A DNA stretch of 64,000 nucleotides from positions 62,001 to 126,000 of the IMG/VR virus record IMGVR_UViG_3300046092_000062. One strand, 5' to 3'. The translations under genes were made by a program, and so were the position numbers. Positions 250 through 43,815 of this stretch are shown piece by piece (position 1 is the first letter of the stretch; the number at the start of each line of letters is the position of its first letter). The notes below the pieces were generated by a model, which was given only the letters and a program-made list of their open reading frames with translations, searched no databases and had not been told where the DNA came from.

Positions 250-753
250 ATGCCCTGGATCCAAAACGTAGCACGTAGCGATGTCACTAAAGGGTTTCAC
301 ATCAACCCCGGTGATAACGCTATGTTGATTCAAATCGTTGACTGCGGCAGCGAATTTCCTACTCCCCTTTACAAGTTTAAAGAAGCTCATCAATTTGAGT
401 TTTTAGATGTAGAGGAAAAGGACTACGTTCTTGAAGAAGAAATGAAGTGCAGTCACGAACAAGCCGCAGAGCTAGTTCGTTTGTTGCAACATGCACTAGA
501 GAATCGCATGAACGTTATTGTTCATTGCCATGCTGGTGTTTGCCGCAGCGGTGCAGTATGTGAAGTTGGAGTCATGCTTGGCTTTGATGACACTGAAGCA
601 TTTCGTGCTCCTAACTTGCTAGTCAAGCATCGCATGATGAAGCAGCTGGGTTGGACGTATGATGAGAACGAAGAGCCAACGATCAATGGTCAACCATATC
701 AATACAGCGCAGGCGGGATCATTTTACCCCCAAGTCACGAAGGTGATATTTAA
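250..753 (+). CDS. Cys-dependent protein tyrosine/dual-specificity phosphatase
   Basis: HC-x5-R active-site loop VHCHAGVCRSG; start moved to ATG 250 after AAGGA RBS. Confidence 0.8.
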   Translation: MPWIQNVARSDVTKGFHINPGDNAMLIQIVDCGSEFPTPLYKFKEAHQFEFLDVEEKDYVLEEEMKCSHEQAAELVRLLQHALENRMNVIVHCHAGVCRSGAVCEVGVMLGFDDTEAFRAPNLLVKHRMMKQLGWTYDENEEPTINGQPYQYSAGGIILPPSHEGDI

Positions 754-1094: not shown

Positions 1095-1749
1095 GGTCCG
1101 TGCCGCAGAAGGTGGCGAAGACAGTAAACTATTTGTAAAAGACTTGGCACAAGCCTACATTAAATTTGCACACAGCAAAGGCTGAACTAGCCGCCTGATA
1201 AATGAGTATCTTGGCGAAGTTCATATCTTAGTCGAGGGTGCTGATTTATCTGGCTTATACAACGAGCCAGGTGGACACCGAATACAGCGTGTACCACCAA
1301 CAGAGCGAAAAGGACGAGTACATACCAGTACTGTTACTGTCGCTGTTGTTGATCCAAGTGTGCCGACCACTACCATAAAAGAATCTGATTTGCGGATTGA
1401 ATGGTACAGCGGAACAGGCGCAGGAGGACAACACCGTAACAAGCACCAAAACAGTGCCCGCGTTACGCACATACCTAGTGGCACAGTAGTAACAGCACAG
1501 TGTCGCAGTAGGGAAAATAGTTTGGCAGAAGCTATGCAAACTATTCGAGAAAGAGTTGACAAGATAACAAAAGACTGTTATAATAACAACTTAGCAAGCA
1601 ACAGAAAGCAACAAGTTGGTTCAGGGATGCGAGGAGACAAAATTCGCACATACCGCTTTCAGGACGATACAGTTAAAGATCACGTAAGTGACAAGACTGC
1701 AAGCGTTAAGAAAGTGTTAGCCGGCAACTTTGACTTACTTTGGAATTAA
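1078..1749 (+). CDS. prfA: RF1-type peptide chain release factor lacking domain 1, with in-frame TGA at 1183-1185 (probable readthrough)
   Basis: Frame from ATG 1078 (GAGAGG RBS): MKRVIEVRAAEGGEDSKLFVKDLAQAYIKFAHSKG*TSRLINE...RIQRVPPTERKGRVHTSTVTVAV...GTGAGGQHRNK; PxT specificity motif and GGQ. The ORF track shows only the 1360-1749 part. Confidence 0.88.
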
Positions 1750-2857: not shown

Positions 2858-2933
2858 GCCTTTATAGCTCAGTTGGTAGAGCAGAGGATTGAAAATCCTT
2901 GTGTCACTGGTTCGAATCCGGTTAGAGGCACCA
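2858..2933 (+). tRNA. tRNA-Phe(GAA)
   Basis: Canonical cloverleaf, ttGAAaa loop, CCA. Confidence 0.95.
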
Positions 2934-2948
2934 AATTATAGGAGTAGT

Positions 2949-4172
2949 ATGGCAAAGTTTTCGGAGAAGTTCTTCTGTCCTGCACCGTGGACAATGTTAT
3001 ACTATCATGCCAACTCTCCTAGTCCGTGCCACATGATTAAAAATTTAGAGATGGAAGCGACCCCATCTGAATATTTTAATAGCGAATGGCTTAAGAATAT
3101 AAAACAAGAAATGCAGCAAGGGATTGTTCCTGCTGCATGTTCTGGTTGTAAAGAGCGTGAGAGTCATGGACTAAAAAGCACACGCGGCGCTATTTGGAAT
3201 TACTATAATGTAGGACCTGAGCCCGAGTACGAAGATCAATGGTTCGCAAACAAGTTTACCGCAGACAGCCCAACCGTTCCAAAAAGAATTGAGCTTAGGT
3301 TTAGTAATCTATGTAATATGAAATGCAGGATGTGCGACGAAACATCTAGTTCCAGCTTTGCAGCAGAAAAAATTGAACATAAGATTAAACCAGACAAAAA
3401 CGGAAGTCATCTTGAGCATAGCGTGATACCCATCACAAAGATAGAAAACAATTCAATTGATGGCCTCATGGATACTGCCTTTCTAGCGTCAGTTCGAAAG
3501 GTATGTTTAACCGGTGGCGAACCATTTTTAATAAAAGAATATTACAGCTATCTAGATTACTTAATAGACAACGGTTTTAACAAAACACTAGACGTAGAAT
3601 TGTTTACAAATTGCAGTGTATATAATCCATTGTTTATTGATCGACTTAGTAAATTTAAAACAGTTCAAATGGTGATGAGCATCGATGCTGTGGGCAAAGC
3701 GGCTGAATATATTCGTAGTGGAACCGATTGGCCTAAAGTGGAAGCCAATGTGCTTCGACTAAATCAACTAGCAGCTCCATTTAAAATGGAAGTTACAACT
3801 GCCATATCTGCATACAGCCTAATGGACTTTGCAGAGACTGCACGATTTCTAATGAGGTTGTACACCGAAAACAACACCATTGGCGTAAAATGTTACAACG
3901 TAACTTCGCCTCCGGGTATGCACTTTAATAATCTGCCTAAGCCGTTGAGAATACAAGCAATAGATCAAATCGACAAGGCAGTAGAGATTCTAACAGCACC
4001 AAACTATTTGGTACTAGTTACAGAGTTGTTAAACGTGAAACACGCATTGACTACTTCGTCCCCGGATACACCACTGGCATTCTTTGACTATACTAAGAAG
4101 TACGACACCATTAGGGGAGAGTCGTTTGCGGAAGTGTTTTTAACATCTCCTGACAGCACAGATTACTTGTAA
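2949..4172 (+). CDS. radical SAM protein with Cys-rich (twitch/SPASM-like) N-terminus
   Basis: CNMKCRMC (CxxxCxxC), LTGGEPF motif; start moved to ATG 2949 after GGAG. Confidence 0.88.
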   Translation: MAKFSEKFFCPAPWTMLYYHANSPSPCHMIKNLEMEATPSEYFNSEWLKNIKQEMQQGIVPAACSGCKERESHGLKSTRGAIWNYYNVGPEPEYEDQWFANKFTADSPTVPKRIELRFSNLCNMKCRMCDETSSSSFAAEKIEHKIKPDKNGSHLEHSVIPITKIENNSIDGLMDTAFLASVRKVCLTGGEPFLIKEYYSYLDYLIDNGFNKTLDVELFTNCSVYNPLFIDRLSKFKTVQMVMSIDAVGKAAEYIRSGTDWPKVEANVLRLNQLAAPFKMEVTTAISAYSLMDFAETARFLMRLYTENNTIGVKCYNVTSPPGMHFNNLPKPLRIQAIDQIDKAVEILTAPNYLVLVTELLNVKHALTTSSPDTPLAFFDYTKKYDTIRGESFAEVFLTSPDSTDYL

Positions 4173-34151: not shown

Positions 34152-35342
34152 ATGAAAAAATACGATACAGTTGAAGATTACATTGAAGTTATTTCTGGCT
34201 ACCGTGACGTTGTTACCGGTAAGCCCAAGAGTTCGTGGATGTTTAGCTTTGATCCGATTATCAATCTAGCTAGATATGATGTTAGTGTGCTGACCAGTAT
34301 GTGCGAAGCTACATACTCAGCCAAGCCTCTAACTGAACGACAAGGCGAACTGGCTTGCAAGATCCTTCTTAAGTACCAACGGCAACTTGCAGCAAAGGGC
34401 GTTGATGTAAGTCCCATTGAGCAGCCGGTGTGGAGAAATAAATTACGTAAGATGGATTACACCAAGTCCCTTACTATTAGGGATGACACCATTGTTCTGC
34501 AATTTCCTTACTCGACAGACTTGATTGAGCGTTTACGGGCTTTCAGGAAAGATAGTCAGGGACGATGCGTATTTGACAAAGAAAAGAAGCAATGGCACAT
34601 TGCCCTGACAGAATATAATCTAAACTACTGCTATGCGTGGGCTGCATCCAATGGCTTTACTGTTGGCGAAGAAGTCATTGAGTTGAATAACAAGATTGCT
34701 CAGGTTGAACAACAGCCATATGCGATTGAGTTGTTTTGCAACGGTACATCTCTAGACATTAGAAACTGCCCAGACAGCCTGCGTGAATACATTGAAACTA
34801 AACTAGGTGGATTTGCATTTGATAATCTGCTACGTCTAGTAGATGCCTCTAGTGATTTAGGGTACACTATTGATGAAGATCTAAGCCAAGCTGTGATCCA
34901 AGAGTGGGGCACAAGATTCCTACGCATTGCAAGCCATCGCGAAGTTAAGATTAACAGTGATGTTGGCATCGATGAAGATCATTTGTCTAGCGTGTTGGAC
35001 TATGCAGTAAAGGTTGGACGTTTGCCCGTGGTAATTTATGAGCCCGACTTGAGTATTCGATTGTTCCAGCGATTAAAGGAATTGTACCCAGACGAACAAA
35101 TCATTGACGTTGGCAACAGCAAAAGCGTACAAGAACGTATAACACCAGAGACAAAGTTCATATATACAGTTAAGCCCATTAAAGACCTTGAACACATCCC
35201 CATGCTTATTAGCACATCGGGAATGATCTTTGGCGGCGACAAACAAACCATGTTACAAAGATCCAGTAAGGTAGTATATACCGCAGCAGATGTGTATACT
35301 AAAGGCAATACTGGAAAGAAAGTTATTAAAATTGCAGGCTAA
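34152..35342 (+). CDS. hypothetical protein with possible HARP-like domain
   Basis: LQFPYSTDLIERLR...FDKEKKQWHI; coupled to helicase; start moved to 34152. Confidence 0.6.
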   Translation: MKKYDTVEDYIEVISGYRDVVTGKPKSSWMFSFDPIINLARYDVSVLTSMCEATYSAKPLTERQGELACKILLKYQRQLAAKGVDVSPIEQPVWRNKLRKMDYTKSLTIRDDTIVLQFPYSTDLIERLRAFRKDSQGRCVFDKEKKQWHIALTEYNLNYCYAWAASNGFTVGEEVIELNNKIAQVEQQPYAIELFCNGTSLDIRNCPDSLREYIETKLGGFAFDNLLRLVDASSDLGYTIDEDLSQAVIQEWGTRFLRIASHREVKINSDVGIDEDHLSSVLDYAVKVGRLPVVIYEPDLSIRLFQRLKELYPDEQIIDVGNSKSVQERITPETKFIYTVKPIKDLEHIPMLISTSGMIFGGDKQTMLQRSSKVVYTAADVYTKGNTGKKVIKIAG

Positions 35343-36858
35343 ATTAATTATCAAAGACGAAGTTAACGTAAAGATTGAAGGCGTTGACGTAGGGGTTAGG
35401 AAGAAACTTGTAGACAAGTTCAAATACGAAATCCCCGGAGCACGGTATCAGCCTAGCGTTCGCTTGGGACGATGGGACGGCAAAGTTAGTTACTTTCAAT
35501 TAGGTGGCAGCAGCTACATTAACCTGTTGCCTGAAATCTTGCCCGTACTAGATGCAGCAGGTTACGACATCGAAATTGACGATCGTCGCACATACTCTAA
35601 TACCATTGTGTTTGACGAGTTTAAAGAAGACACGTTTGCTCACAAGACATGGCCTGTTGGGCATCCGGCAGCAGGACAGCCTGTTATGTTCCGCGACTAT
35701 CAAGTTGGTATTATCAACAACTTCTTACAGAACCCGCAGGCATTGCAAGAGATTGCCACAGGCGCAGGCAAGACAATTATGACTGCGGCGTTGTCGTTGA
35801 GTGCCGAGAAGTACGGTAAGAGTGTGGTTATTGTTCCTAACAAGGACTTGGTGCGTCAAACAGAGCTAGACTACATTAACTTGGGATTAGACGTTGGTGT
35901 GTACTTTGGTGATCGCAAGGAAGTTGGACGCACTCATACTATTTGCACATGGCAGAGCTTGAACATTCTAATGAAGAACAGTGAAGGCCGCAATGGTGAA
36001 GATGAACCGGCTAGCCATCGTTTGTTAAAGGATCCAACAGACTATATCATTGACGATCTCGTTGATGGAGTGGCATTAGTTATGGTAGACGAAGTACACA
36101 TGGCCAAAGCAGATGCGTTAAAGACTTTGTTGACAAGTGTGTTTGCCCATGTGCCTATCCGTTGGGGACTAACAGGAACAGTGCCTAAAGAAGAATATGC
36201 AGCAGTGTCAATCTTCTGTAGCCTTGGTCCGGTAGTTGGTAAGCTAAGTGCAAGTGAATTGCAAGAAGCCGGACATTTGGCCATGTGCCACGTTAACGTT
36301 GTGCAGCTAATTGATCACGTAGAGTATAAAGACTACCAAAGTGAACTAAAGTACTTGACTACTACAGCGGCACGTATTGCATACATTGCCAAGCTAGTGG
36401 ACAAGATTAAAGAGGGCGGTAATACCCTTGTTCTAGTTGACCGCATTGAAACTGGCAAGATGTTGCAAGTGGAACTGAGTGGATTGTTTAGTTTACTAAG
36501 CGACAAGCCAGACGTGATGTTTGTTAACGGATCTACTAAAGCAAAGGATCGGAAAGATGAATATGACGATGTTGCAACAGCAACTAACAAGATTATTGTG
36601 GCGACTTATGGTGTGGCCGCTGTGGGTATTAATATTCCTAGGATTTTTAATCTGGTTCTTATGGAGCCCGGAAAGAGCTTTGTGCGGGTTATACAAAGTA
36701 TTGGGCGAGGCATTAGAAAAGCGGAAGACAAAGACCATGTAGAGATTTGGGATGTGACCAGTACCTGCAAGTTTTCTAAACGTCACCTAACAGCACGTAA
36801 GAAATTCTACAAAGATGCTAACTACCCATTTACAGTAGAGAAGATTGATTGGCAATGA
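35332..36858 (+). CDS. uvsW: UvsW-like superfamily 2 DNA helicase
   Basis: FRDYQ Q-motif, ATGAGKT, DEVH, GLTGT, QSIGRGIR; probable TTG start. Confidence 0.9.
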   Translation: MQAKLIIKDEVNVKIEGVDVGVRKKLVDKFKYEIPGARYQPSVRLGRWDGKVSYFQLGGSSYINLLPEILPVLDAAGYDIEIDDRRTYSNTIVFDEFKEDTFAHKTWPVGHPAAGQPVMFRDYQVGIINNFLQNPQALQEIATGAGKTIMTAALSLSAEKYGKSVVIVPNKDLVRQTELDYINLGLDVGVYFGDRKEVGRTHTICTWQSLNILMKNSEGRNGEDEPASHRLLKDPTDYIIDDLVDGVALVMVDEVHMAKADALKTLLTSVFAHVPIRWGLTGTVPKEEYAAVSIFCSLGPVVGKLSASELQEAGHLAMCHVNVVQLIDHVEYKDYQSELKYLTTTAARIAYIAKLVDKIKEGGNTLVLVDRIETGKMLQVELSGLFSLLSDKPDVMFVNGSTKAKDRKDEYDDVATATNKIIVATYGVAAVGINIPRIFNLVLMEPGKSFVRVIQSIGRGIRKAEDKDHVEIWDVTSTCKFSKRHLTARKKFYKDANYPFTVEKIDWQ

Positions 36859-37631
36859 AGGGAGTGATCCTTTACTTTCCGTGGGGTGCTGCTGGTAATC
36901 TTGTTCGTAACATAATTACCATTGACCCGCGCTTTGACTTCTTTGATGACAAGGAGTTTAGAGATTCTTACCCTACAGCTACAGACAGGTACAACTGGTT
37001 ATTGGAATATTATCAACGACTAATGGCTCCTGCTTTGTGGCTACAGCGTGAGTGGAGTATTCGGCAAAAGCTGCACACCTGCTATTACACTAACAATCGA
37101 ATACAGTTCTGGAACCCTGACGCATTAGTTGCATACGACTGTCATGGCCAAGAGCATGAAATCGACGAGATCCTGTCTAACCAACAACTGCGGTGTTATG
37201 ACCGACATCGTATTGCTACCGGCGAACGAGATGAACAACTTAGTACATGGCACTTGCAAGACTGCAACCATGTTTTTCTCTTGCCCAGCAACACTAAGCT
37301 GATAGCTGAAATATATAACAGCAAAAATCCATCGCTAAACCAACTAAACGGTAGCCTGCAGGAGAAACAAACAGCGGCATTGGTTGCCATAAACGCCATG
37401 TCTAATCGTCTCAGTAGTCTAGTAGATCCACTAATCACTAACGGCAGCAAGGTAAACATTTACACAGCAGACACGCTATACACTGCAAACGGATACGATA
37501 TTATCAATGACATAGTGACAAATTTACATTTAGAAGTCACGTTACACCAGATTAAGACATTGCACTCAATATGGTTGCAAAGTACTAAAGAAGTGTACTA
37601 TAATTATTTTAACAGAGAGCTTACCACATGA
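36855..37631 (+). CDS. hypothetical, sulfotransferase-like P-loop N-terminus
   Basis: ILYFPWGAAGNLV. Confidence 0.55.
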   Translation: MKGVILYFPWGAAGNLVRNIITIDPRFDFFDDKEFRDSYPTATDRYNWLLEYYQRLMAPALWLQREWSIRQKLHTCYYTNNRIQFWNPDALVAYDCHGQEHEIDEILSNQQLRCYDRHRIATGERDEQLSTWHLQDCNHVFLLPSNTKLIAEIYNSKNPSLNQLNGSLQEKQTAALVAINAMSNRLSSLVDPLITNGSKVNIYTADTLYTANGYDIINDIVTNLHLEVTLHQIKTLHSIWLQSTKEVYYNYFNRELTT

Positions 37632-38131
37632 GAATATTAACGCTGGATAATACAGCATACGACCTTAACGAAATTCCCGATGAAGTTGAGGACTTGCGAT
37701 TCGCAGTACTTGATAACAGCGATAACAAGAACCCCGATTACTTTTACATTCCCTTAATCTTTTTGGAATCATTTAATAGTCCTGCATTAGTGCTAAAAAT
37801 TGGAGACAGCGTTATTAAGATGCCAGTTGATTGGCAACTGCTAATCGGAGAACCAGATCTAGGCGATCTTGAAGTAGTTCCATTAACAAGCATTAACGAC
37901 AGAGGCTTCAGTGTATTCTGCTTTAATCCACTAAGCAGCTTCAAGCCAGAATTTAAACCAGTTGAGATTGTAGACATTTATCAAGATGTTAAATGGTACT
38001 TTCCTAAACTCAAACCTGGGCAGATGCTAGCAGTGCCGCTTGAGTCGGGAACAGAGAAACCCCTATGCGCCTACTTTGTAAAAGACATTAGTCGTCAAAG
38101 TGAGGTCGTTGATTACAGTAAGTGTTGGTAA
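37628..38131 (+). CDS. conserved-looking all-beta protein, possible degenerate Hint fold
   Basis: LKIGDSVIKMPVDWQLL...VEIVDI...WYFPKL pattern; no N-terminal Cys. Confidence 0.6.
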   Translation: MRILTLDNTAYDLNEIPDEVEDLRFAVLDNSDNKNPDYFYIPLIFLESFNSPALVLKIGDSVIKMPVDWQLLIGEPDLGDLEVVPLTSINDRGFSVFCFNPLSSFKPEFKPVEIVDIYQDVKWYFPKLKPGQMLAVPLESGTEKPLCAYFVKDISRQSEVVDYSKCW

Positions 38132-38132
38132 T

Positions 38133-38282
38133 ATGGGCAATTACACAGAACCACAAATTTTTGAAACCATTAATAGACTCGCTAGAATCTATTTGGAGAG
38201 CTACCCAGACGACAAGGAAGGACTGGAACGTTTCTTGCGCTGGGCACATCTACAATACGGATACAAGTATGGGACAGCTTAA
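38133..38282 (+). CDS. small hypothetical protein (49 aa)
   Basis: MGNYTEPQIFETINRLARIY... Confidence 0.55.
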   Translation: MGNYTEPQIFETINRLARIYLESYPDDKEGLERFLRWAHLQYGYKYGTA

Positions 38283-38544
38283 ACCTGGTGCCACTTACAT
38301 TTACGAAAGCCCGGATGGTGGCCAAACAACCTATGCTAGAGAAGTTGGTACCAATGAGCGTGTGATGATTGGGCAAAGTTACTCAGCCAGTAGCAAATGG
38401 GATCAAATCCAAGAGGATAAACTATGGGGTAATATTCGTCGCAAGGCAAAGAGTCATCCCGGTTTACAAGAAGAGCTAGATCGTGTTATAATGTTCTATA
38501 AACTACTTGAAGACAACGACGAAGTTATGTGGCATCCTGTATGA
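38269..38544 (+). CDS. hypothetical protein
   Basis: MGQLKPGATYIYESPDGGQTTYARE; start moved to 38269. Confidence 0.65.
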   Translation: MGQLKPGATYIYESPDGGQTTYAREVGTNERVMIGQSYSASSKWDQIQEDKLWGNIRRKAKSHPGLQEELDRVIMFYKLLEDNDEVMWHPV

Positions 38545-38738
38545 TAAAATATCAATACCATTATATATCCAGCCTTATTAGAGATTCAGATTCCATTGGT
38601 TCATGGATAAACACCACCGCTGAGTTAAATGAGCTTGGTGCAGAGGGGTGGGATGTTGTTACTATAACACCTGATTCCTCTAATGTGGTTGGATCGTTTT
38701 TAAACATAGTACTCCGGAGACCCTATATAGATGAGTGA
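38541..38738 (+). CDS. DUF4177-like small protein
   Basis: YQYHYI...LNELGAEGWDVV...LRRP. Confidence 0.55.
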   Translation: MIKYQYHYISSLIRDSDSIGSWINTTAELNELGAEGWDVVTITPDSSNVVGSFLNIVLRRPYIDE

Positions 38739-39198
38739 TAAACTAAACATCGCAAATGAGATGGCACAGTTTGATAACAAGAACCGTGACTTCTACGATA
38801 GCCTAAGCGAAGAAGAAAAGAAAAAGTTTAGCCCATTCCTAATGATTCGTTGGGGTGCTACAGTAGAAGGCAGCGCAGACATGCAGGCCTATTACTTAAT
38901 GAGCCTAAACGAAAAGTTAAATAAACAGTTCTTCGACGTAAGCACAAGTGAGCACAAAAAGCTACAGTGGTTGTTGGCCACTACAGTTAGTCCAGGATTG
39001 GGCAAACAGTATCACAAGTGGTTGGCAGGTAAGAAGAAAGAAAGTAACAACAAAGCAGTTAAGTTTCTTAGAGGAATTTACCCGCACTTGAAAGAAGATG
39101 AAATTGAGCTACTCGGACGACTTAACAGTAAAGACGATCTTAAACGACTGGCTAAAGAGCACGGATGGGATGACAAGCGAATCAAAGCAGACCTATAA
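38731..39198 (+). CDS. possible clamp-loader small subunit (T4 gp62-like)
   Basis: FSPFLMIRW...LNEKLN...LQW pattern; replication context. Confidence 0.5.
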   Translation: MSDKLNIANEMAQFDNKNRDFYDSLSEEEKKKFSPFLMIRWGATVEGSADMQAYYLMSLNEKLNKQFFDVSTSEHKKLQWLLATTVSPGLGKQYHKWLAGKKKESNNKAVKFLRGIYPHLKEDEIELLGRLNSKDDLKRLAKEHGWDDKRIKADL

Positions 39199-39871
39199 GT
39201 GTCAGTATTGTAGCAAATCATTTGCTAAGGAATCTACTCTAGCAAGTCATGCCTGCGAACAAAAGCGCAGAGCACAGCAACAAAACGAAACTGGCGTACA
39301 GTTGGGCTTTAAAGCATACCTGCGATTTTATCAAACAACACAAGGTGCAGGCAAGATCAAAACATACGAAGACTTTGCTGGTAGTCCATACTACACAGCA
39401 TTTGTTAAGTTTGGCAGACACCTTGTGGGCATACGTGCAGTTAACCCACTGGTATTCATCGACTGGTTACTTAAAAACAATAAGAAGTTAGACTACTGGA
39501 CCAAGGATGCGTTTTACGCAGAGTGGTTAGCAGAGTACATGAAAAAAGAAAACCCGCAAGACGCATTAGAGCGGGCACTAAAGGAAATGACAAGTTATGC
39601 AGAGGATCATCCAGAACTTAAAAACGGGTATAGAGACTATTTCAGATACGCTAATGGTAATAGGATCTGTCATCATATTAGCACCGGTCGTATTAGTCCT
39701 TGGGTTGTCTTTAATTGTGAGAGCGGGGTTGCCTTTCTTGATACGTTATCTAATGAACAAGTGGAAATAATTTTGCCTGCTATTGATCCTGATTACTGGC
39801 AGAAGAAGTTTAGAGATTATCCAGAAGACGTAACGTGGGTTAAATCAATTATGGAAGCAGCGGGACTATGA
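39170..39871 (+). CDS. C2H2-type zinc-finger protein
   Basis: YKCQYCSKSFAKESTLASHAC; start moved to 39170. Confidence 0.7.
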   Translation: MTSESKQTYKCQYCSKSFAKESTLASHACEQKRRAQQQNETGVQLGFKAYLRFYQTTQGAGKIKTYEDFAGSPYYTAFVKFGRHLVGIRAVNPLVFIDWLLKNNKKLDYWTKDAFYAEWLAEYMKKENPQDALERALKEMTSYAEDHPELKNGYRDYFRYANGNRICHHISTGRISPWVVFNCESGVAFLDTLSNEQVEIILPAIDPDYWQKKFRDYPEDVTWVKSIMEAAGL

Positions 39872-40458
39872 TTTTCAAAAGTGACGTAGACATTGACTTT
39901 GGCGATCGTAATAGAGCGCTGGCATTGCTAAAGCACACGCCAGCAGCCATTATTCGTGACGGTAAGTTGATCAAGCACAATACGGGCATCTATGTAACTG
40001 ATGTACCTGAGGATCCATTCATGTGCGTTGCAGGCATTGATCACAAAGCGGCAGAGGATCGCGGCTATGCCAAGCTGGACTTTCTGAATGTTTCTTTATA
40101 TACGCAGATAAAGAATGAGCAGCATTTGCAAGAACTGCTAGCCATTGAGCCAGACTGGGCAGCGTTATATGATCCAGAGTTTTGTGCTAAGTTGATTCAC
40201 ATTGGCGCACATTACGATACACTGATTAAGATGCCAGAAGCGGTGAATACTATTCCACGTATGGCTATGTTTCTAGCATTGATTCGCCCTGCTAAAAGGC
40301 ATTTGATTGGGAAAACTTGGAAGGAAGTTGCTGCTACAGTTTGGGACAAACCTGAAGACGACAGCTACTTCTTTAAGAAAAGCCACGCAGTTGCTTACGC
40401 ACATCTTGTGGTTGTAAACATGAACCTTCTATCCCAAGCGTCTAACGAGGGTAATTGA
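39868..40458 (+). CDS. dnaE: miniature DNA polymerase III alpha (family C) catalytic core
   Basis: SDVDIDF, KHNTG, GYAKLDFL, FKKSHAVAYA in DnaE order within 196 aa. Confidence 0.8.
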   Translation: MIFKSDVDIDFGDRNRALALLKHTPAAIIRDGKLIKHNTGIYVTDVPEDPFMCVAGIDHKAAEDRGYAKLDFLNVSLYTQIKNEQHLQELLAIEPDWAALYDPEFCAKLIHIGAHYDTLIKMPEAVNTIPRMAMFLALIRPAKRHLIGKTWKEVAATVWDKPEDDSYFFKKSHAVAYAHLVVVNMNLLSQASNEGN

Positions 40459-40800
40459 TCGGCGCTTTGAGCGTTTGCTAGCCATCTCTTTAAGGCTAGT
40501 TTGTGGACCTACTTTGATTTCCACGTCTTTACTGTTCATAGTCTTAACGCATGGCTTGAACACAACCCAATCAGCTTTAAGAAACACGTTGATTGGGATT
40601 AATCTATTGCTTTCCCACCACCATTGCTCGCCTAGTTCTAGAAACTTGGCCTTTTGTTCCGGCGTCTTCAAGCTACCAAAGTCGTAGATCGTAGTGATCT
40701 GCTCGTCTGCGTTTTGGACAATCCCGATATAATCATTCCCACCGTACACTAGATACGTTATAAAGGGATATTGTTCTAATAGCTGTTGTATTTGTTCCAC
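40429..40800 (-). CDS. hypothetical protein
   Basis: 123 aa, convergent with mini-DnaE, TAG stop. Confidence 0.7.
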   Translation of the reverse strand: MEQIQQLLEQYPFITYLVYGGNDYIGIVQNADEQITTIYDFGSLKTPEQKAKFLELGEQWWWESNRLIPINVFLKADWVVFKPCVKTMNSKDVEIKVGPQTSLKEMASKRSKRRSITLVRRLG

Positions 40801-40835
40801 CGTGTTTCGCTAAATATGTTAAAGATAATCTGAAA

Positions 40836-41330
40836 ATGCAGACTACCAAAATATATTTATATGATAACACGGTGACGGTTCAAATAATGGACCCCACCAT
40901 CTTCACCACAAGGAACAGACCTGTGTACAGTCGCCCTATTAAAGTCTATCAAGGTATAGACAACCCAATCCAAGTTTTAGTAAAGAACCAGGACCAGAAA
41001 GCTGCAAACATTGCAGGCTATGCAGTCCAAGCTGATATCCAAGACCCAACTAACCAAGTGACGGTTAGCAGCTATGCTGTCACATTCTCTAATGTGTCGT
41101 TGGGACAAGGTACATTTACTATTGACAAAAATACTGTTAGCAGCTTAGAGCAACGTTTCTACAAGTTAACCTTTAAAACAATTAAAACAAGTGACAATTC
41201 AGAGACACCTGCGTATGTAGATGACAACTACGGCGCACCACTAGACCTGCAAGTGCTACCTGCATATTATTCAGTAACTGAGCCTAGCCCAACTGTTGAT
41301 AATAGTGTAATTGATGGCGGAGATATTTAA
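40836..41330 (+). CDS. putative virion structural protein (beta-rich)
   Basis: TAAATA at 40811; heads tail-fibre operon. Confidence 0.6.
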   Translation: MQTTKIYLYDNTVTVQIMDPTIFTTRNRPVYSRPIKVYQGIDNPIQVLVKNQDQKAANIAGYAVQADIQDPTNQVTVSSYAVTFSNVSLGQGTFTIDKNTVSSLEQRFYKLTFKTIKTSDNSETPAYVDDNYGAPLDLQVLPAYYSVTEPSPTVDNSVIDGGDI

Positions 41331-42817
41331 TGACTATAGCAAATGTAAATGTAAGACAAATCTTACTTAAAAAGGGCAACACTGCTCGAAGCCAAAACTA
41401 CACCGGTGCAATTGGTGAAATTACCCTAGATACAGATTTAAACAGTATCAGAGTACACAATGGCGTTACAGCAGGCGGCGTTAATATACTTGCGACTCAA
41501 GCGCAAATCAACGCTCTAACATCTAGTATTAGTACTATCACTGGATTAGATGCCAACTTAGTTGCGAACATTAGCTCGTTGCTAGCCAATGCAGCAAGTC
41601 AACAGACCACGATCAATTCTTTACTTGCCAACGCAGCAAGCCAACAAACACAGATTGCTAATATTACCACCGGTACTGCAACCTTTGGAAACTTGTTACC
41701 AAGTGCTAACGTAACATACAGTTTAGGTAGCCCGACACAGCAGTGGAAAGACTTGTACGTTAGCAGCAACACTATCTACATTGCTGGTATCCCGTTGCGA
41801 GTAGACACCAATGGAAATTTAACCATTAACGGCAACAGTGTAAGCGGTGGTCCGAGTGGAACGGTATTGCCGCCGGACGCAAATGGCGTGCTAACTAACC
41901 TCAATGGGGGACTGGCGTGGGGCGATCCTAATAGACTTGGCTATAACGACACCTTAATCTATATGTCGGGGTATGATTCTAATCTTATTTTCCAGCGTGG
42001 ACAAACACGCTACGGTGAAATTAAAGCAGGTCCGGAATTCTTTGGACTAGAAAACAGCGGCGAAATTACCATTAACACCGGCGCCACATGGTCCTTTGCA
42101 CAGGATGGTACATTAACATTCCCTGACAATCTCACAGTTGTTGACAGCGTTATTGGTCGTCGACTAGAAGAAGTTAACGGCGAAGCAGTGGATGCAGTAG
42201 GATCAAAGTTGACATTTACTGATACTGATGTACAAATGGAGGCATACGCCGATCCAGACGGACTTAACAACATAGCTCATGCTCGCTTGTTTGCTAATGC
42301 TACCTCAGCAATTATGGAAGCATCGATTGAAGACGTCGCTGGCGTAACTTTTGGACGAATAACAGTAGCTGGTGGTGGCATAGACATGTCACTAAGTGAT
42401 GGTGTACTCGACAATTCGTGGGACTTTGCTTTAGATGGGACTACATTATTACCCAATGGTGGTCGAGTAGTTTTTGGTGCGCAAAACGGCGATTCGTACA
42501 TCCAAGCAGGGCAAGGCTTCCACATCAGTAGCCGCGAAGGCATTAGTCTTGAAGCAGTGGATGCAACAGATCCAGAGAATCCAGTTACACAAGGATGGTA
42601 CTTTAGTCCAGATAGCAGAATAACATTCCCTGATGGTACAAAGCAAGGTACTGCATACGTCCACAATAATGTCAACTTAGATGGCGGAGGAGCTAGCACA
42701 GTGTACGAAGTAGAAACAGCATACGCAGATGGCGGCTTTGCTAGCATTAGAAGTTTTAGTGAAACGTTTGATGGCAACGAAGGCAACAATTACATATTAG
42801 ATGGTGGTAGAGCATAA
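41330..42817 (+). CDS. tail fibre protein with Mtd-N/hyaluronidase-like N-terminal domain
   Basis: QILLKKG...GEITLDTD...HNGVTAGG; duplicated LLANAASQQT; DGTLTFPD repeats. Confidence 0.75.
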   Translation: MTIANVNVRQILLKKGNTARSQNYTGAIGEITLDTDLNSIRVHNGVTAGGVNILATQAQINALTSSISTITGLDANLVANISSLLANAASQQTTINSLLANAASQQTQIANITTGTATFGNLLPSANVTYSLGSPTQQWKDLYVSSNTIYIAGIPLRVDTNGNLTINGNSVSGGPSGTVLPPDANGVLTNLNGGLAWGDPNRLGYNDTLIYMSGYDSNLIFQRGQTRYGEIKAGPEFFGLENSGEITINTGATWSFAQDGTLTFPDNLTVVDSVIGRRLEEVNGEAVDAVGSKLTFTDTDVQMEAYADPDGLNNIAHARLFANATSAIMEASIEDVAGVTFGRITVAGGGIDMSLSDGVLDNSWDFALDGTTLLPNGGRVVFGAQNGDSYIQAGQGFHISSREGISLEAVDATDPENPVTQGWYFSPDSRITFPDGTKQGTAYVHNNVNLDGGGASTVYEVETAYADGGFASIRSFSETFDGNEGNNYILDGGRA

Positions 42818-43815
42818 TGGCAAATAGAATACAACTACGCAGAGATACAGCAGCTAACTGGGCTAGCGTTAACCCTGTATTAGCAGATGGCGAGCCCGGC
42901 TTAGAGTGGGACACAAACAAGATCAAATACGGCGATGGCATTACTAGCTGGGACGGATTGAGCTATGCTGGCAACGAGGTCACTTACGGTAACGTGCAAG
43001 TTGCAGAATACCTTACTCAATTTGATGGTACCATTAACTTTACATCTAGTCCAGCTGGTATCAGTGGAGCTGGTATTATCAGCACAGAAAGCCTGATTGC
43101 GTCGACTGCAACACTAACTTCGATTGAAAATGAAGTATCACAGGTGGGCACACAAATCACCGGAATTGAAGCATGGGCCGGCGCTGGCGCAGATAACGGC
43201 TTTGTATGGATTGGATCTAATCCCAATTTTGATTCGTTGTTTAACATCGGCGATAGCATTGTTGGTTGGAGTTTTTACCCAGAGGGATCTCCGGAGGCAG
43301 CAGTAACTATTACAGAATACAACCCACCACTTGGTGCTCCTGCCTTGCGCTTTTCTGGAAGTCCTGGTTCGGCACCGTATGTAGCACAAAGTCCAGATTA
43401 TTCGTCTGTACAAAATCCAGTGACAGTAACCGTTGACACTAATAACTGGGTGTTTAATGCAGATGGATCACTAACATTGCCAGCAACGTCTGCTAACGTG
43501 AGCATTGATGCTACTACTAACATTGTGTCCTTGGGCACTAACGATACTATCACATTCAGTGGGTTTAGTGGAGAAATCCTAGTTAACGACTTGTATGATG
43601 GTTACATGTACAAATATCTAGTGGGTAGCGGCAGCGTTTGGTTAATGGGCAGTACAAACACCAATTGGACTCCGGCAAATACTGCGCCAGGAAACAGCGT
43701 AACAGTTGCTGGTTATACGTCAATTGCATTTACTACCGGCGCATACATATTCACTAACTTGGCAGAAGAACGATCATACAGCTTTTATGCCGTTAAGACC
43801 AGAAACGGTGCTTAA
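42817..43815 (+). CDS. tail fibre protein with major tropism determinant N-terminal domain
   Basis: RIQLRRDTAANW...NPVLADGEPGLEWDTNKIKYGDG. Confidence 0.8.
   Translation: MANRIQLRRDTAANWASVNPVLADGEPGLEWDTNKIKYGDGITSWDGLSYAGNEVTYGNVQVAEYLTQFDGTINFTSSPAGISGAGIISTESLIASTATLTSIENEVSQVGTQITGIEAWAGAGADNGFVWIGSNPNFDSLFNIGDSIVGWSFYPEGSPEAAVTITEYNPPLGAPALRFSGSPGSAPYVAQSPDYSSVQNPVTVTVDTNNWVFNADGSLTLPATSANVSIDATTNIVSLGTNDTITFSGFSGEILVNDLYDGYMYKYLVGSGSVWLMGSTNTNWTPANTAPGNSVTVAGYTSIAFTTGAYIFTNLAEERSYSFYAVKTRNGA

What the first reader, a model, noticed from the sequence alone, without database searches (positions are those of the whole stretch)
38731..40458. 196-aa miniature family C polymerase with possible partner subunits
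Seen: DnaE motifs in order, D-x-D (SDVDIDF), H-x-x-G (KHNTG), K-x-D-F-L and F-x-K-S-H-A-x-A-Y, in an intact ORF with coupled start and clean stop. Only about 28 aa separate the first two motifs. Known: E. coli DnaE is about 1160 aa with catalytic D401/D403/D555 and PHP, thumb, clamp-binding and OB domains, all absent here. It is co-transcribed with a C2H2 zinc-finger protein and a gp62-like protein. Inference: a minimal palm-plus-fingers enzyme, either one subunit of a split replicase or a repurposed nucleotidyltransferase (priming, end-processing or signalling).
Basis: partly seen in the sequence, partly recalled or inferred. Interest (0 to 1): 0.75.

Follow-up and report, generated by a model that had tools for sequence, protein, structure and literature searches.

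The report
C-terminal half of split mini-PolIII
The 196-aa gene is real and conserved, but it is only the C-terminal half of a two-gene, stripped-down relative of the bacterial replicative polymerase (Pol III alpha) that typifies one group of jumbo phages and was described computationally in 2021; its biochemical role is still untested.

Summary
The ORF at 39868-40458 (+) exists as described, and all the motifs are present. It is a full-length member of phrog_11778. At least 7,900 90%-identity clusters of about 185-215 aa were found. D6, D8 and D71 are invariant and correspond to E. coli DnaE D401, D403 and D555. Median dN/dS is 0.10. Its AF2 model (pLDDT 96.7) aligns only to Pol III alpha/PolC palm-plus-fingers (Z 9.3-6.2; next unrelated hit 3.8).

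It is not a stand-alone enzyme. The NTP-binding GRGS half of the palm is a separate 171-aa gene 120 kb away (G000:C1:222401-222916, PF07733), which ends exactly where this ORF begins in DnaE order. The same split occurs in five cultured relatives, with the pieces 15-224 kb apart. Rare natural fusions of 375-376 aa exist. The predicted N+C complex scores ipSAE 0.91, against 0.00 for the best control. The genome also encodes an 896-aa PolB. No PHP, HhH or DnaQ domain was found.

Iyer et al. 2021 already described this "minimal split Pol III alpha" of group 2.2 jumbo phages. The neighbours are syntenic: a fold-level gp62-like protein, a C2HC zinc-finger protein and a convergent 123-aa gene. Whether they are subunits is untested. 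This is a new member of a known, biochemically uncharacterised kind.

The parts
39868..40458 (+). C-terminal piece of the split minimal Pol III alpha-like protein (196 aa): the Mg-binding half of the palm plus a reduced fingers domain
   Evidence: phrog_11778 E 1.3e-60. Profile hits only Pol III alpha in the PDB. AF2 pLDDT 96.7. VIA-align Z 9.3-6.2 to DnaE/PolC over 187-190 residues. dN/dS 0.10.
39880..39900 (+). SDVDIDF: D6 and D8 correspond to E. coli D401 and D403 (catalytic); D10 corresponds to D405 (Asp in DnaE groups, Asn in PolC)
   Evidence: D6 and D8 invariant, D10 in >=90% of 82 diverse homologs. HMM alignment to E. coli 399-406. Residue roles from PMC3919608.
39973..39987 (+). KHNTG: conserved H37 and G40 in the palm beta-hairpin. 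Only 27 residues follow the DxD strand, so the thumb is absent.
   Evidence: H37 and G40 >=90% conserved. Strands E24-30 and E33-42 in the model.
40072..40086 (+). KLDFL: K69 and D71 correspond to E. coli K553 and D555 (D555 is the third catalytic Asp)
   Evidence: K69 and D71 invariant. Aligned to E. coli VKFDFLGL within 538-641.
40282..40296 (+). IRPAK: fingers motif corresponding to E. coli FRPG (639-641)
   Evidence: P141 invariant, R140 and K143 >=90% conserved. Alignment.
40369..40401 (+). FFKKSHAVAYA: fingers motif corresponding to E. coli FNKSHSAAYA (about 756-766)
   Evidence: K170, H173 and A178 >=90% conserved. Aligned to E. coli 739-769. Also the stretch that weakly hits full-length phage DnaE families phrog_405, phrog_11165 and phrog_12219.
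39170..39871 (+). 233-aa protein with an N-terminal C2HC zinc finger and a roughly 200-aa domain of unknown fold. Its stop overlaps the start of the C-piece.
   Evidence: phrog_11058 E 2.8e-60. C11, C14, H27 and C29 invariant. Profile hits C2H2 fingers only at positions 5-29. Present in 72 of 80 related loci and in 5 cultured relatives. Still abuts the C-piece in a distant lineage. dN/dS 0.11.
38731..39198 (+). 155-aa helical protein, candidate clamp-loader small subunit (T4 gp62-like) with an RFC-type collar domain
   Evidence: phrog_11758. Atlas neighbours include PF16790 clusters (score 0.92, TM 0.73). AF2 pLDDT 88. T4 gp62 is the top hit in Foldseek, VIA and the Foldseek-independent wide search, followed mostly by clamp-loader collar domains. 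No sequence-level support.
40429..40800 (-). Convergent 123-aa gene of unknown function, overlapping the 3' end of the C-piece by 30 nt. Invariant WWWES motif and a conserved basic tail KRSKRRSITLV.
   Evidence: phrog_11637 E 1.4e-33. Present next to the C-piece in 79 of 80 loci and in 5 cultured relatives. Also next to the fused form. dN/dS 0.06. No Pfam, PDB or Atlas match.
37628..38131 (+). Conserved 167-aa protein of unknown function in the same co-oriented block
   Evidence: phrog_11279 E 3.8e-48. 62-89% identity across the loci, dN/dS 0.04.
35290..36858 (+). UvsW-like SF2 DNA helicase that heads the co-oriented block of overlapping genes
   Evidence: PF21241 UvsW_N, ResIII and Helicase_C. 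Syntenic in relatives.

Best explanation
The ORF encodes the C-terminal piece of a two-gene, minimal DNA polymerase III alpha-like (family C) nucleotidyltransferase. This enzyme is characteristic of 'group 2.2' (Rak2 / PA5oct / Atu_ph07-like) jumbo phages.

Shown:
- The 196-aa piece carries the three metal-binding aspartates (D6, D8, D71 = E. coli D401, D403, D555), K69 (= K553) and a cut-down fingers domain.
- The other half of the Pol-beta-like palm, with the triphosphate-binding GxGRGS motif, is a 171-aa protein encoded 120 kb away.
- That protein ends at ...EFLR, exactly where this ORF starts in DnaE order.
- Both pieces are single-copy, length-conserved and under purifying selection.
- They are predicted to form one tight heterodimer, and they occur fused in a few natural 375-376-aa proteins.

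Inferred:
- The heterodimer rebuilds one active site and is a Mg-dependent, probably template-directed, DNA polymerase.
- Because it lacks thumb, PHP/proofreading, clamp-binding, HhH and OB parts, it would be distributive on its own.
- It probably acts as an auxiliary polymerase beside the phage's T4-type PolB replisome (primer extension, gap filling or repair), possibly helped by conserved neighbours.

My probabilities: identity as half of a split Pol III alpha-like heterodimer, about 0.9. Active nucleotidyltransferase, about 0.75. Templated DNA polymerase in replication or repair, about 0.5.
For: Family and conservation:
- phrog_11778 matches at full length.
- At least 7,902 90%-identity clusters and 414 50%-identity representatives, intact ones about 185-215 aa.
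- D6, D8, K69, D71 and P141 are invariant.
- Median dN/dS is 0.10.

Homology to Pol III alpha:
- The profile hits only Pol III alpha in the PDB, colinearly.
- The AF2 model has pLDDT 96.7. It aligns over 187-190 of 196 residues to Taq, Mtb and E. coli DnaE and to PolC at Z 9.3-6.2; the next unrelated hit scores 3.8.

The N-piece:
- PF07733 scores 34 bits, above its cut-off, and phrog_11127 matches at full length.
- At least 7,979 clusters of 169-174 aa.
- GxGRGS is invariant.
- All five cultured relatives tested have an N-piece ending at ..EF[LF]x (one with one further residue), 15-224 kb from the C-piece.

Assembly of the two pieces:
- Predicted N+C complex: ipSAE 0.91, best of 3 controls 0.00. 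In the tool's calibration the mark was reached by 58 of 80 solved complexes and 2 of 110 mismatched pairs. The interface includes C-piece residues 1-12 and N-piece residues 132-145 and 168-171.
- Natural fusions P0174, P0391 and P0392.

Genome context:
- An 896-aa PolB, a gp44-like clamp loader and a UvsW-like helicase are present.
- Prior description of the family: Iyer et al. 2021, PMC7824862.
Against: No biochemical or genetic data exist for any member; none was found in the library.

The high complex score may partly reflect the model's memory of intramolecular DnaE contacts. It therefore shows likeness, not binding.

About 97 residues of the E. coli fingers (642-738) and the whole thumb are missing. 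Primer-template grip and part of the dNTP pocket may therefore be lost or supplied in trans.

No proofreading domain was found (PHP or DnaQ).

No Pfam model recognises the C-piece. Foldseek E-values alone are weak, 4e-3.
Confidence: 0.8

Rival explanations
1. The N+C core is only part of a larger dedicated machine. The translationally coupled C2HC zinc-finger protein would supply DNA binding in place of thumb/HhH/OB. The convergent 123-aa protein and/or the clamp-loader subunits would be true subunits or direct partners. This extends the best explanation rather than contradicting it.
For: The ZnF stop overlaps the C-piece start. ZnF is present in 72 of 80 related loci and in 5 cultured relatives, and it still overlaps the C-piece start in a distant lineage. 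The 123-aa gene is adjacent in 79 of 80 loci and next to the fused form. The N-piece always lies 0.7-2.6 kb upstream of the gp44-like clamp loader, while the C-piece lies just downstream of the gp62-like candidate. All are under purifying selection.
Against: Gene order in these phages is broadly conserved, so synteny alone is weak evidence. In some loci up to about 4.5 kb is inserted between ZnF and the C-piece, and a few loci show no ZnF within 6 kb. The 123-aa gene is on the opposite strand. No interaction was tested here, because the single complex job went to the N+C pair.
Confidence: 0.3
2. A repurposed nucleotidyltransferase rather than a templated DNA polymerase. Examples: template-independent tailing, primer synthesis, end processing or nucleotide-signal synthesis, as in other Pol-beta-fold enzymes.
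For: Thumb, clamp-binding, OB and HhH parts and half the fingers are lost. A complete PolB is present for replication. There is no proofreading partner.
Against: The retained non-palm part is specifically the DnaE fingers core, with its RPG and KSHAxAY motifs conserved. That is hard to explain without a DNA or nucleotide-pairing role. The genomic context is replication genes.
Confidence: 0.2
3. One reading: the 196-aa protein alone is a stand-alone miniature polymerase.
For: It carries all three catalytic Asp residues and folds confidently on its own in silico.
Against: It lacks the GS/GRGS strand-helix of the Pol-beta fold that binds the triphosphate. That element sits on the N-piece, which is present in every complete genome tested and is fused to the C-piece in some. 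Residues 1-12, which carry the DxD strand, are buried in the predicted interface.
Confidence: 0.04
4. Artefact or decay: a pseudogene fragment, an assembly break, or exons joined by an intron or a split intein.
For: Only that the gene looks like a piece of a larger protein.
Against: The same boundaries occur in thousands of clusters and in six genomes, with the pieces 15-224 kb apart. dN/dS is 0.10. Independent DNA samples carry the same junction. Each piece has its own start and stop. The 171 + 196 residues are fully accounted for by DnaE-homologous sequence, leaving no room for a roughly 100-aa N-intein or a roughly 35-aa C-intein.
Confidence: 0.01

Closest known systems
Minimal split DNA polymerase III alpha of group 2.2 jumbo phages (Iyer, Anantharaman, Krishnan, Burroughs & Aravind 2021, Viruses 13:63; PHROG families phrog_11778 for the C-piece and phrog_11127 for the N-piece)
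   Same: The architecture is the same: an N-terminal NTP-binding piece and a C-terminal Mg/DNA-template-binding piece on distant genes. PolB is present, and no other Pol III domains are. Homologs occur in Phosso, Atu_ph07, PA5oct/Paride, 121Q/Rak2-like phages, XacN1 and SCTP-2 at 37-48% identity.
   Different: Nothing essential differs. This copy is from an uncultured freshwater jumbo phage of about 321 kb. Details added here: the conserved split point, rare natural fusions, the conserved neighbours, and the linkage of each piece to a clamp-loader gene.
Bacterial DnaE / Pol III alpha (E. coli 1160 aa; Taq; M. tuberculosis DnaE1) and PolC
   Same: Pol-beta-like palm with the D401/D403/D555 triad, K553, the GRGS motif (in trans), and the fingers core with RPG and KSHAxAY. 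The fold aligns at Z 9.3-6.2. D10 matches the DnaE-type D405, not the PolC Asn.
   Different: There is no PHP domain, thumb (E. coli about 418-510), fingers segment about 642-738, nor anything after about residue 781 (beta-binding, HhH, OB, tau-binding). The catalytic domain is split into two polypeptides. The total is 367 aa against about 1160.
Cyanobacterial split DnaE joined by a split intein
   Same: A family-C polymerase encoded by two distant genes.
   Different: In cyanobacteria the halves carry intein parts and are ligated into one full-length DnaE. Here there is no intein sequence, the split lies inside the palm just before the DxD strand, and the pieces presumably associate non-covalently. 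The cyanobacterial case is from general knowledge and was not tested here.
T4 gp62 / RFC-type clamp-loader collar (for the 155-aa neighbour at 38731-39198)
   Same: T4 gp62 is the best structural match in three searches, and most of the next hits are clamp-loader collar domains. Atlas neighbours carry PF16790.
   Different: There is no sequence-level match. Z is only 5.7-7.2. The gene is not adjacent to the gp44-like gene, which lies 120 kb away next to the N-piece.

Membership tests
Family C DNA polymerase catalytic core (Pol III alpha / DnaE) | Three metal-binding aspartates (E. coli D401, D403, D555) | tested here: met
   D6, D8 and D71 are invariant in 82 diverse homologs and align to these positions.
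Family C DNA polymerase catalytic core (Pol III alpha / DnaE) | Triphosphate-binding GS (GRGS) element of the Pol-beta-like palm on the same polypeptide | tested here: not met
   Absent from the 196-aa ORF. Present and invariant on the separate 171-aa N-piece at G000:C1:222401-222916. The feature is met only in trans.
Family C DNA polymerase catalytic core (Pol III alpha / DnaE) | Palm-plus-fingers fold of Pol III alpha | tested here: met
   VIA-align Z 9.3-6.2 over 187-190 of 196 residues to nine DnaE/PolC entries; the next hit scores 3.8. The top 11 Foldseek hits are all Pol III alpha or PolC.
Family C DNA polymerase catalytic core (Pol III alpha / DnaE) | PHP domain | tested here: not met
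   PF02811 finds nothing in the whole genome at E<=10.
Family C DNA polymerase catalytic core (Pol III alpha / DnaE) | Thumb domain between the DxD strand and the HxxG strand | tested here: not met
   27 residues here, against more than 100 in E. coli. Profile positions 21-53 have no DnaE counterpart.
Family C DNA polymerase catalytic core (Pol III alpha / DnaE) | Clamp-binding / HhH / OB / tau-binding C-terminal region | tested here: not met
   The protein ends at the equivalent of E. coli residue about 781. PF14579 and PF17657 find nothing in the genome.
Family C DNA polymerase catalytic core (Pol III alpha / DnaE) | Template-directed DNA polymerase activity | not testable with these tools
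   No biochemical report was found for any member.
Minimal split Pol III alpha of group 2.2 jumbo phages (Iyer et al. 2021; phrog_11778 / phrog_11127) | Full-length match to the C-piece family, with conserved length | tested here: met
   phrog_11778 E 1.3e-60, protein residues 4-190 on profile positions 6-193 of 197. Intact homologs are about 185-215 aa.
Minimal split Pol III alpha of group 2.2 jumbo phages (Iyer et al. 2021; phrog_11778 / phrog_11127) | Separate N-terminal NTP-binding piece encoded by a distant gene in the same genome | tested here: met
   171-aa ORF 120 kb away; PF07733 above cut-off; phrog_11127 E 1.6e-45. One copy of each piece.
Minimal split Pol III alpha of group 2.2 jumbo phages (Iyer et al. 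2021; phrog_11778 / phrog_11127) | Accompanied by a family B polymerase and T4-type replication genes, with no other Pol III domains | tested here: met
   896-aa PolB, gp44-like clamp loader phrog_168 E 8e-78, UvsW-like helicase. No PHP, HhH or DnaQ.
Minimal split Pol III alpha of group 2.2 jumbo phages (Iyer et al. 2021; phrog_11778 / phrog_11127) | The two pieces assemble into one catalytic unit | tested here: inconclusive
   In silico only: ipSAE 0.91 against 0.00 for the best control, and natural fusions exist. No physical evidence.
T4 gp62-type clamp-loader small subunit (for ORF 38731-39198) | Match to PF16790 Phage_clamp_A or to T4 gp62 by sequence | tested here: not met
   No Pfam hit. 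hhalign probability 0.5%. The profile does not hit gp62 in the PDB. PF16790 does not hit the relatives. The only weak genome hit lies elsewhere, at window 391-531.
T4 gp62-type clamp-loader small subunit (for ORF 38731-39198) | gp62 / RFC collar-like fold | tested here: inconclusive
   gp62 is the top hit in three searches, but with low scores (Foldseek E 0.5; Z 7.2 and 5.7). About three-quarters of the top 20 in the wide search are clamp-loader or related AAA+ C-terminal collar domains.
T4 gp62-type clamp-loader small subunit (for ORF 38731-39198) | Encoded next to the gp44-type large subunit | tested here: not met
   The gp44-like gene is at G000:C1:224596-225513, about 124 kb away. The 133-aa ORF that follows it is not conserved in relatives.
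C2H2 zinc finger (for ORF 39170-39871) | C-x2-4-C-x12-H-x3-5-H ligand set | tested here: not met
   The invariant ligands are C11, C14, H27 and C29, i.e. C-x2-C-x12-H-x-C (C2HC). The profile nonetheless matches classical C2H2 fingers in the PDB at E 4.4e-6 over positions 5-29. Pfam zf-C2H2 scores 18.4 bits, below its 25.2 cut-off.
Split-intein-joined DnaE | Intein N and C parts flanking the split | tested here: not met
   The N-piece ends at EFLR and the C-piece begins MIFKSDVDIDF. Both are colinear with DnaE, with no extra sequence.

The most novel reading that the evidence does not exclude
The split mini-Pol III is the core of a second, dedicated polymerase module that is physically coupled to the T4-type replisome. 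Each half is genetically tied to one clamp-loader subunit: the N-piece lies just upstream of the gp44-like gene, and the C-piece just downstream of the gp62-like candidate. The translationally coupled C2HC zinc-finger protein and the ever-present convergent 123-aa protein would replace the lost thumb, HhH, OB and tau-binding parts. That would give a two-polymerase (family B plus family C) replisome, analogous to alpha-tau coupling or to the PolC/DnaE division of labour. It would also be the smallest known working family-C polymerase.
Probability: 0.15. Interest if true: 0.75.

Novelty: new member of a known kind. Interest (0 to 1): 0.4.

Why it matters
The family is abundant: thousands of sequence clusters in freshwater, wastewater and cultured jumbo phages. 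It is strongly conserved, yet no member has been studied at the bench.

If the 367-aa heterodimer is an active polymerase, it would define the minimal functional core of family C polymerases. It would also show that a Pol-beta-type active site can be assembled from two polypeptides. Finally, it would raise the question of why phages with a complete PolB replisome keep a second polymerase.

For this scan, the practical value is a correct annotation. The ORF is half of an enzyme. Its partner lies outside the window, and the idea itself is already in the literature (PMC7824862).

Tried and rejected
- Nucleotide search of phage records with 38000-41000 found nothing.
- Pfam does not recognise the C-piece, and PF17657 (fingers) finds nothing in the genome.
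- Other DnaE parts were sought and not found: PHP, HHH_6 and DnaQ/RNase_T. Own-profile hmmsearch of the six-frame genome found one copy of each piece.
It was rebuilt without them.
- gp62 claim at sequence level: no support from hhalign against T4 gp62, a profile search of the PDB, or PF16790 on five relatives. The weak PF16790 hit at window 391-531 sits among unrelated genes and is judged spurious. The 133-aa ORF after the gp44-like gene was considered as an alternative gp62 and rejected, because it is not conserved.
- The 123-aa convergent protein has no match in Pfam, the PDB or the Atlas.
- The zinc-finger protein was considered as a hidden third DnaE piece (thumb or fingers remainder) and rejected. 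Neither its profile nor its Atlas structural neighbours show any DnaE match.
- Intein, intron, assembly-artefact and pseudogene readings were rejected (see rival explanations).
- The consensus promoter/terminator scan is at chance level: 23 promoter-like sites against 18.8 expected, and 8 terminator-like sites against 7.8. The best promoter-like site is at 38463-38492.
- Metatranscriptome contigs cover the region, but they cannot prove transcription or define operon ends.
- The PA5oct omics paper gives no gene-level statement on these genes in its main text.
Full report
**What is in the sequence**

The window is bases 62001-126000 of a single 320,767-bp virus contig. CheckV estimates it about 92% complete. 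It is found mainly in freshwater metagenomes.

The ORF at 39868-40458 (+) is intact, 196 aa, with an ATG start and a TGA stop. Its ATG overlaps the TGA of the upstream ORF in an ATGA overlap.
- SDVDIDF, residues 5-11
- KHNTG, residues 36-40
- KLDFL, residues 69-73
- FFKKSHAVAYA, residues 168-178
- a further motif, IRPAK, residues 139-143

The eight ORFs from 35290 to 40458 lie on the + strand, and successive ORFs overlap.

**Family and selection**

Pfam does not recognise the protein. PHROGs places it at full length in phrog_11778, annotated 'DNA polymerase' (E 1.3e-60). Its last 40 residues also weakly hit full-length phage DnaE families.

tblastn finds 96 jumbo-phage records at 37-48% identity and near-full coverage. 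They include Phosso, Atu_ph07, PA5oct/Paride, 121Q/Rak2-like phages, XacN1 and SCTP-2. Several are already annotated 'DnaE-like DNA polymerase III alpha'.

The metagenomic family is very large. At least 7,902 clusters at 90% identity were found. The exhaustive search gave 414 representatives at 50% identity, with intact members about 185-215 aa.

In 82 diverse representatives, D6, D8, K69, D71 and P141 are invariant. D10, H37, G40, R140, K143, K170 and H173 are at least 90% conserved.

Pairwise Nei-Gojobori dN/dS was computed on 81 sequences, using pairs with dS of 0.1-1.5. The median is 0.10.

It is not met.

**Homology to Pol III alpha**

A profile of the 82 sequences hits only Pol III alpha chains in the PDB (E 1.8e-5). 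The match is colinear in three stretches: E. coli 399-417, 538-641 and 739-769. This places D6, D8 and D10 on D401, D403 and D405, and K69 and D71 on K553 and D555.

D401, D403 and D555 are the catalytic residues conserved in the whole C family. D405 is Asp in the DnaE groups but Asn in PolC (PMC3919608).

The AF2 model is very confident (pLDDT 96.7). The top 11 Foldseek hits are all Pol III alpha or PolC, but with weak E-values. VIA-align aligns 187-190 of the 196 residues to Taq (459-838), M. tuberculosis DnaE1 (417-808), E. coli (397-781) and PolC. Z runs from 9.3 to 6.2, and the next unrelated hit scores 3.8.

Relative to E. coli alpha, the protein lacks:
- the thumb (about 418-510)
- about 97 residues of the fingers (642-738)
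- everything after about residue 781

**It is only half of the catalytic domain**

PF07733 finds one more DnaE-like piece in the genome, at G000:C1:222401-222916. That is 120 kb from this ORF and outside the window. It is a 171-aa ORF ending ...GLGRGSSVASYVLYLLGVHKVNSIYYDLDISEFLR. It scores above the Pfam cut-off and matches phrog_11127 at full length.

In DnaE order it stops exactly where the 196-aa ORF begins. The split therefore falls inside the Pol-beta-like fold, between the GS-motif helix and the DxD strand.

This N-piece family is equally large and length-conserved: at least 7,979 clusters of 169-174 aa. GxGRGS is invariant.

All five cultured relatives tested have an N-piece ending at the same ..EF[LF]x point (one carries one further residue). 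The distances to the C-piece are 43 kb (Paride), 182 kb (Atu_ph07), 224 kb (Phosso), 35 kb (fHe-Yen9-04) and 15 kb (XacN1). Each piece is single-copy in this genome.

**Do the halves work together?**

Two lines of evidence say yes.

First, natural single-ORF fusions exist. P0174, P0391 and P0392 are 375-376 aa, come from different samples, and are colinear with N + linker + C. They sit at the C-piece locus, with the homolog of the convergent 123-aa gene downstream.

Second, the predicted complex of this genome's own two pieces scores ipSAE 0.91. The best of three controls scores 0.00. In the tool's calibration the mark was reached by 58 of 80 solved complexes and 2 of 110 mismatched pairs; those counts hold only roughly here because my own alignments were used. 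The interface includes C-piece residues 1-12 (the DxD strand) and N-piece residues 132-145 (GRGSS) and 168-171 (the C-terminus).

One caveat applies. The model may be recalling intramolecular DnaE contacts, so this shows likeness rather than binding.

**Rest of the genome**

The genome encodes an 896-aa family B polymerase. It also encodes a gp44-like clamp loader (phrog_168, E 8e-78) and a UvsW-like helicase at 35290-36858. No PHP, HHH_6, Pol III finger or DnaQ/RNase_T domain was found. PolB is therefore the likely main replicase.

Gene order is conserved in five cultured relatives and in 80 IMG/VR loci. The order is: helicase ... o167 - (o140) - o155 - ZnF - [variable insert] - C-piece - convergent 123-aa gene.

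Counts across the 80 loci, many of which are truncated:

| Gene | Loci with it |
|---|---|
| 123-aa gene | 79 |
| ZnF | 72 |
| o155 | 68 |

In some loci up to about 4.5 kb is inserted between ZnF and the C-piece.

All these genes are under purifying selection:

| Gene | dN/dS |
|---|---|
| ZnF | 0.11 |
| o155 | 0.19 |
| 123-aa gene | 0.06 |
| o167 | 0.04 |

*The zinc-finger protein.* It has invariant C11, C14, H27 and C29, so it is C2HC. Its profile matches classical C2H2 fingers only at positions 5-29. The remaining roughly 200 residues match nothing. In a distant lineage, the nearest split relative of the fused forms, the ZnF homolog still overlaps the C-piece start.

*The 155-aa protein.* It has no sequence match to gp62. 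Its AF2 model (pLDDT 88) nevertheless has T4 gp62 as the top hit in three searches:
- Foldseek: E 0.5
- VIA second look: Z 7.2
- the Foldseek-independent search of 48,161 chains: Z 5.7, where about three-quarters of the top 20 are clamp-loader or related AAA+ collar domains

Its Atlas neighbours carry PF16790. 'gp62-like' is therefore plausible at fold level only.

*The N-piece locus.* The order there is also conserved: MazG ... N-piece - o129 - gp31/Cpn10-like - gp44-like clamp loader, with the clamp loader 0.7-2.6 kb downstream in all five relatives. Each half of the mini-polymerase is thus linked to one clamp-loader gene. I did not find this noted in Iyer et al.. Its meaning is unknown.

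**Expression**

The consensus promoter and terminator scans are at chance level. No terminator-like site lies on the + strand between 38731 and 40458. The best sigma-70-like site is at 38463-38492.

Contigs from three metatranscriptomic libraries cover parts of the region. One library, at 99% identity or more, covers ZnF, the C-piece 3' end and the 123-aa gene. A related strain in another library covers 38185-40288, including a contig bridging the ZnF/C-piece junction. Depth over the 123-aa gene is roughly 2-6 times that over the neighbouring genes.

This is compatible with expression and co-transcription but does not prove either, because DNA can be present in RNA libraries. An independent DNA sample carries the same junction.

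**Mechanism**

Shown: two conserved polypeptides together contain every element of the DnaE palm active site plus the fingers core. They are predicted to dock into one unit.

Inferred: the heterodimer rebuilds a two-metal nucleotidyl-transfer site. The N-piece GRGS motif and the C-piece K69 would hold the triphosphate. D6, D8 and D71 would hold the metal ions.

Without thumb, clamp-binding, HhH/OB and proofreading parts, it should be distributive and non-proofreading on its own. My best guess, at about 0.5, is an auxiliary templated DNA polymerase working beside the PolB replisome in primer extension, gap filling or repair. Iyer et al. also suggest this. Accessory proteins are possible.

A non-templated or otherwise repurposed transferase remains open, at about 0.2.

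**Known or new**

Iyer et al. 2021 (Viruses 13:63, PMC7824862) already describe this in group 2.2 jumbo phages. [quoted passage not shown] PHROGs and several GenBank records carry the annotation. I found no experimental study.

The finding is a correct rediscovery and a new member of a known, uncharacterised kind.
- the exact conserved split point
- the natural fusions
- the controlled complex prediction
- the selection estimates
- the conserved neighbour set, including the clamp-loader linkage

Noticed in passing
window 40429-40800 (-): A 123-aa gene converges on the C-piece and overlaps its 3' end by 30 nt. It is adjacent in 79 of 80 related loci and next to the fused form. It has an invariant WWWES motif, a conserved basic tail KRSKRRSITLV and dN/dS 0.06. 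It matches nothing in Pfam, the PDB or the Atlas, and it has the highest depth of the region in RNA-library contigs.
   Followed up: partly
G000:C1:221736-225513 (outside the window; loci L001, L102, L110): The N-piece locus has a conserved gene order in five distant relatives: MazG pyrophosphatase, N-piece, o129, gp31/Cpn10-like co-chaperonin, then the gp44-like clamp loader. The N-piece therefore sits beside the clamp-loader large subunit, while the C-piece sits beside the gp62-like candidate.
   Followed up: partly
L104:1066-2193 and L112:519-1649 (P0174, P0391, P0392): Natural single-ORF fusions of the N- and C-pieces (375-376 aa) occur in a small metagenomic lineage. They sit at the C-piece locus. 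Whether the fusion is ancestral or secondary was not resolved.
   Followed up: partly
window 37628-38131 (+): A 167-aa protein (phrog_11279) is the most conserved gene of the block: 62-89% identity across the loci and dN/dS 0.04. Its function is unknown.
   Followed up: no
window 36849-37631 (+): A 260-aa ORF between the helicase and o167 is found in only 3 of 80 related loci and has no PHROG. It looks like a lineage-specific insert. Variable inserts also occur between ZnF and the C-piece in relatives.
   Followed up: no
window 38529-38738 (+): A 69-aa ORF has a weak DUF4177 match (E 2e-4, below the Pfam cut-off). It is wedged between o140 and the gp62-like gene.
   Followed up: no
window 1360-1749 and 2889-4172 (+): An RF-1-domain (peptide-chain-release-factor-like) protein and a 427-aa radical SAM protein lie at the start of the window. 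A weak PF16790 hit at 391-531 in this non-replication context is probably spurious.
   Followed up: no
window 41330-43815 (+): Two tail-fibre-like proteins (495 and 332 aa) follow the block. In cultured relatives the same position holds a virion protein, a primase and a DnaB-like helicase.
   Followed up: no
L008:7865-8458 (Xanthomonas phage XacN1): XacN1 carries an annotated 'DNA polymerase III epsilon subunit' about 2.3 kb downstream of its C-piece. The window's genome has no DnaQ/RNase_T match at all.
   Followed up: partly
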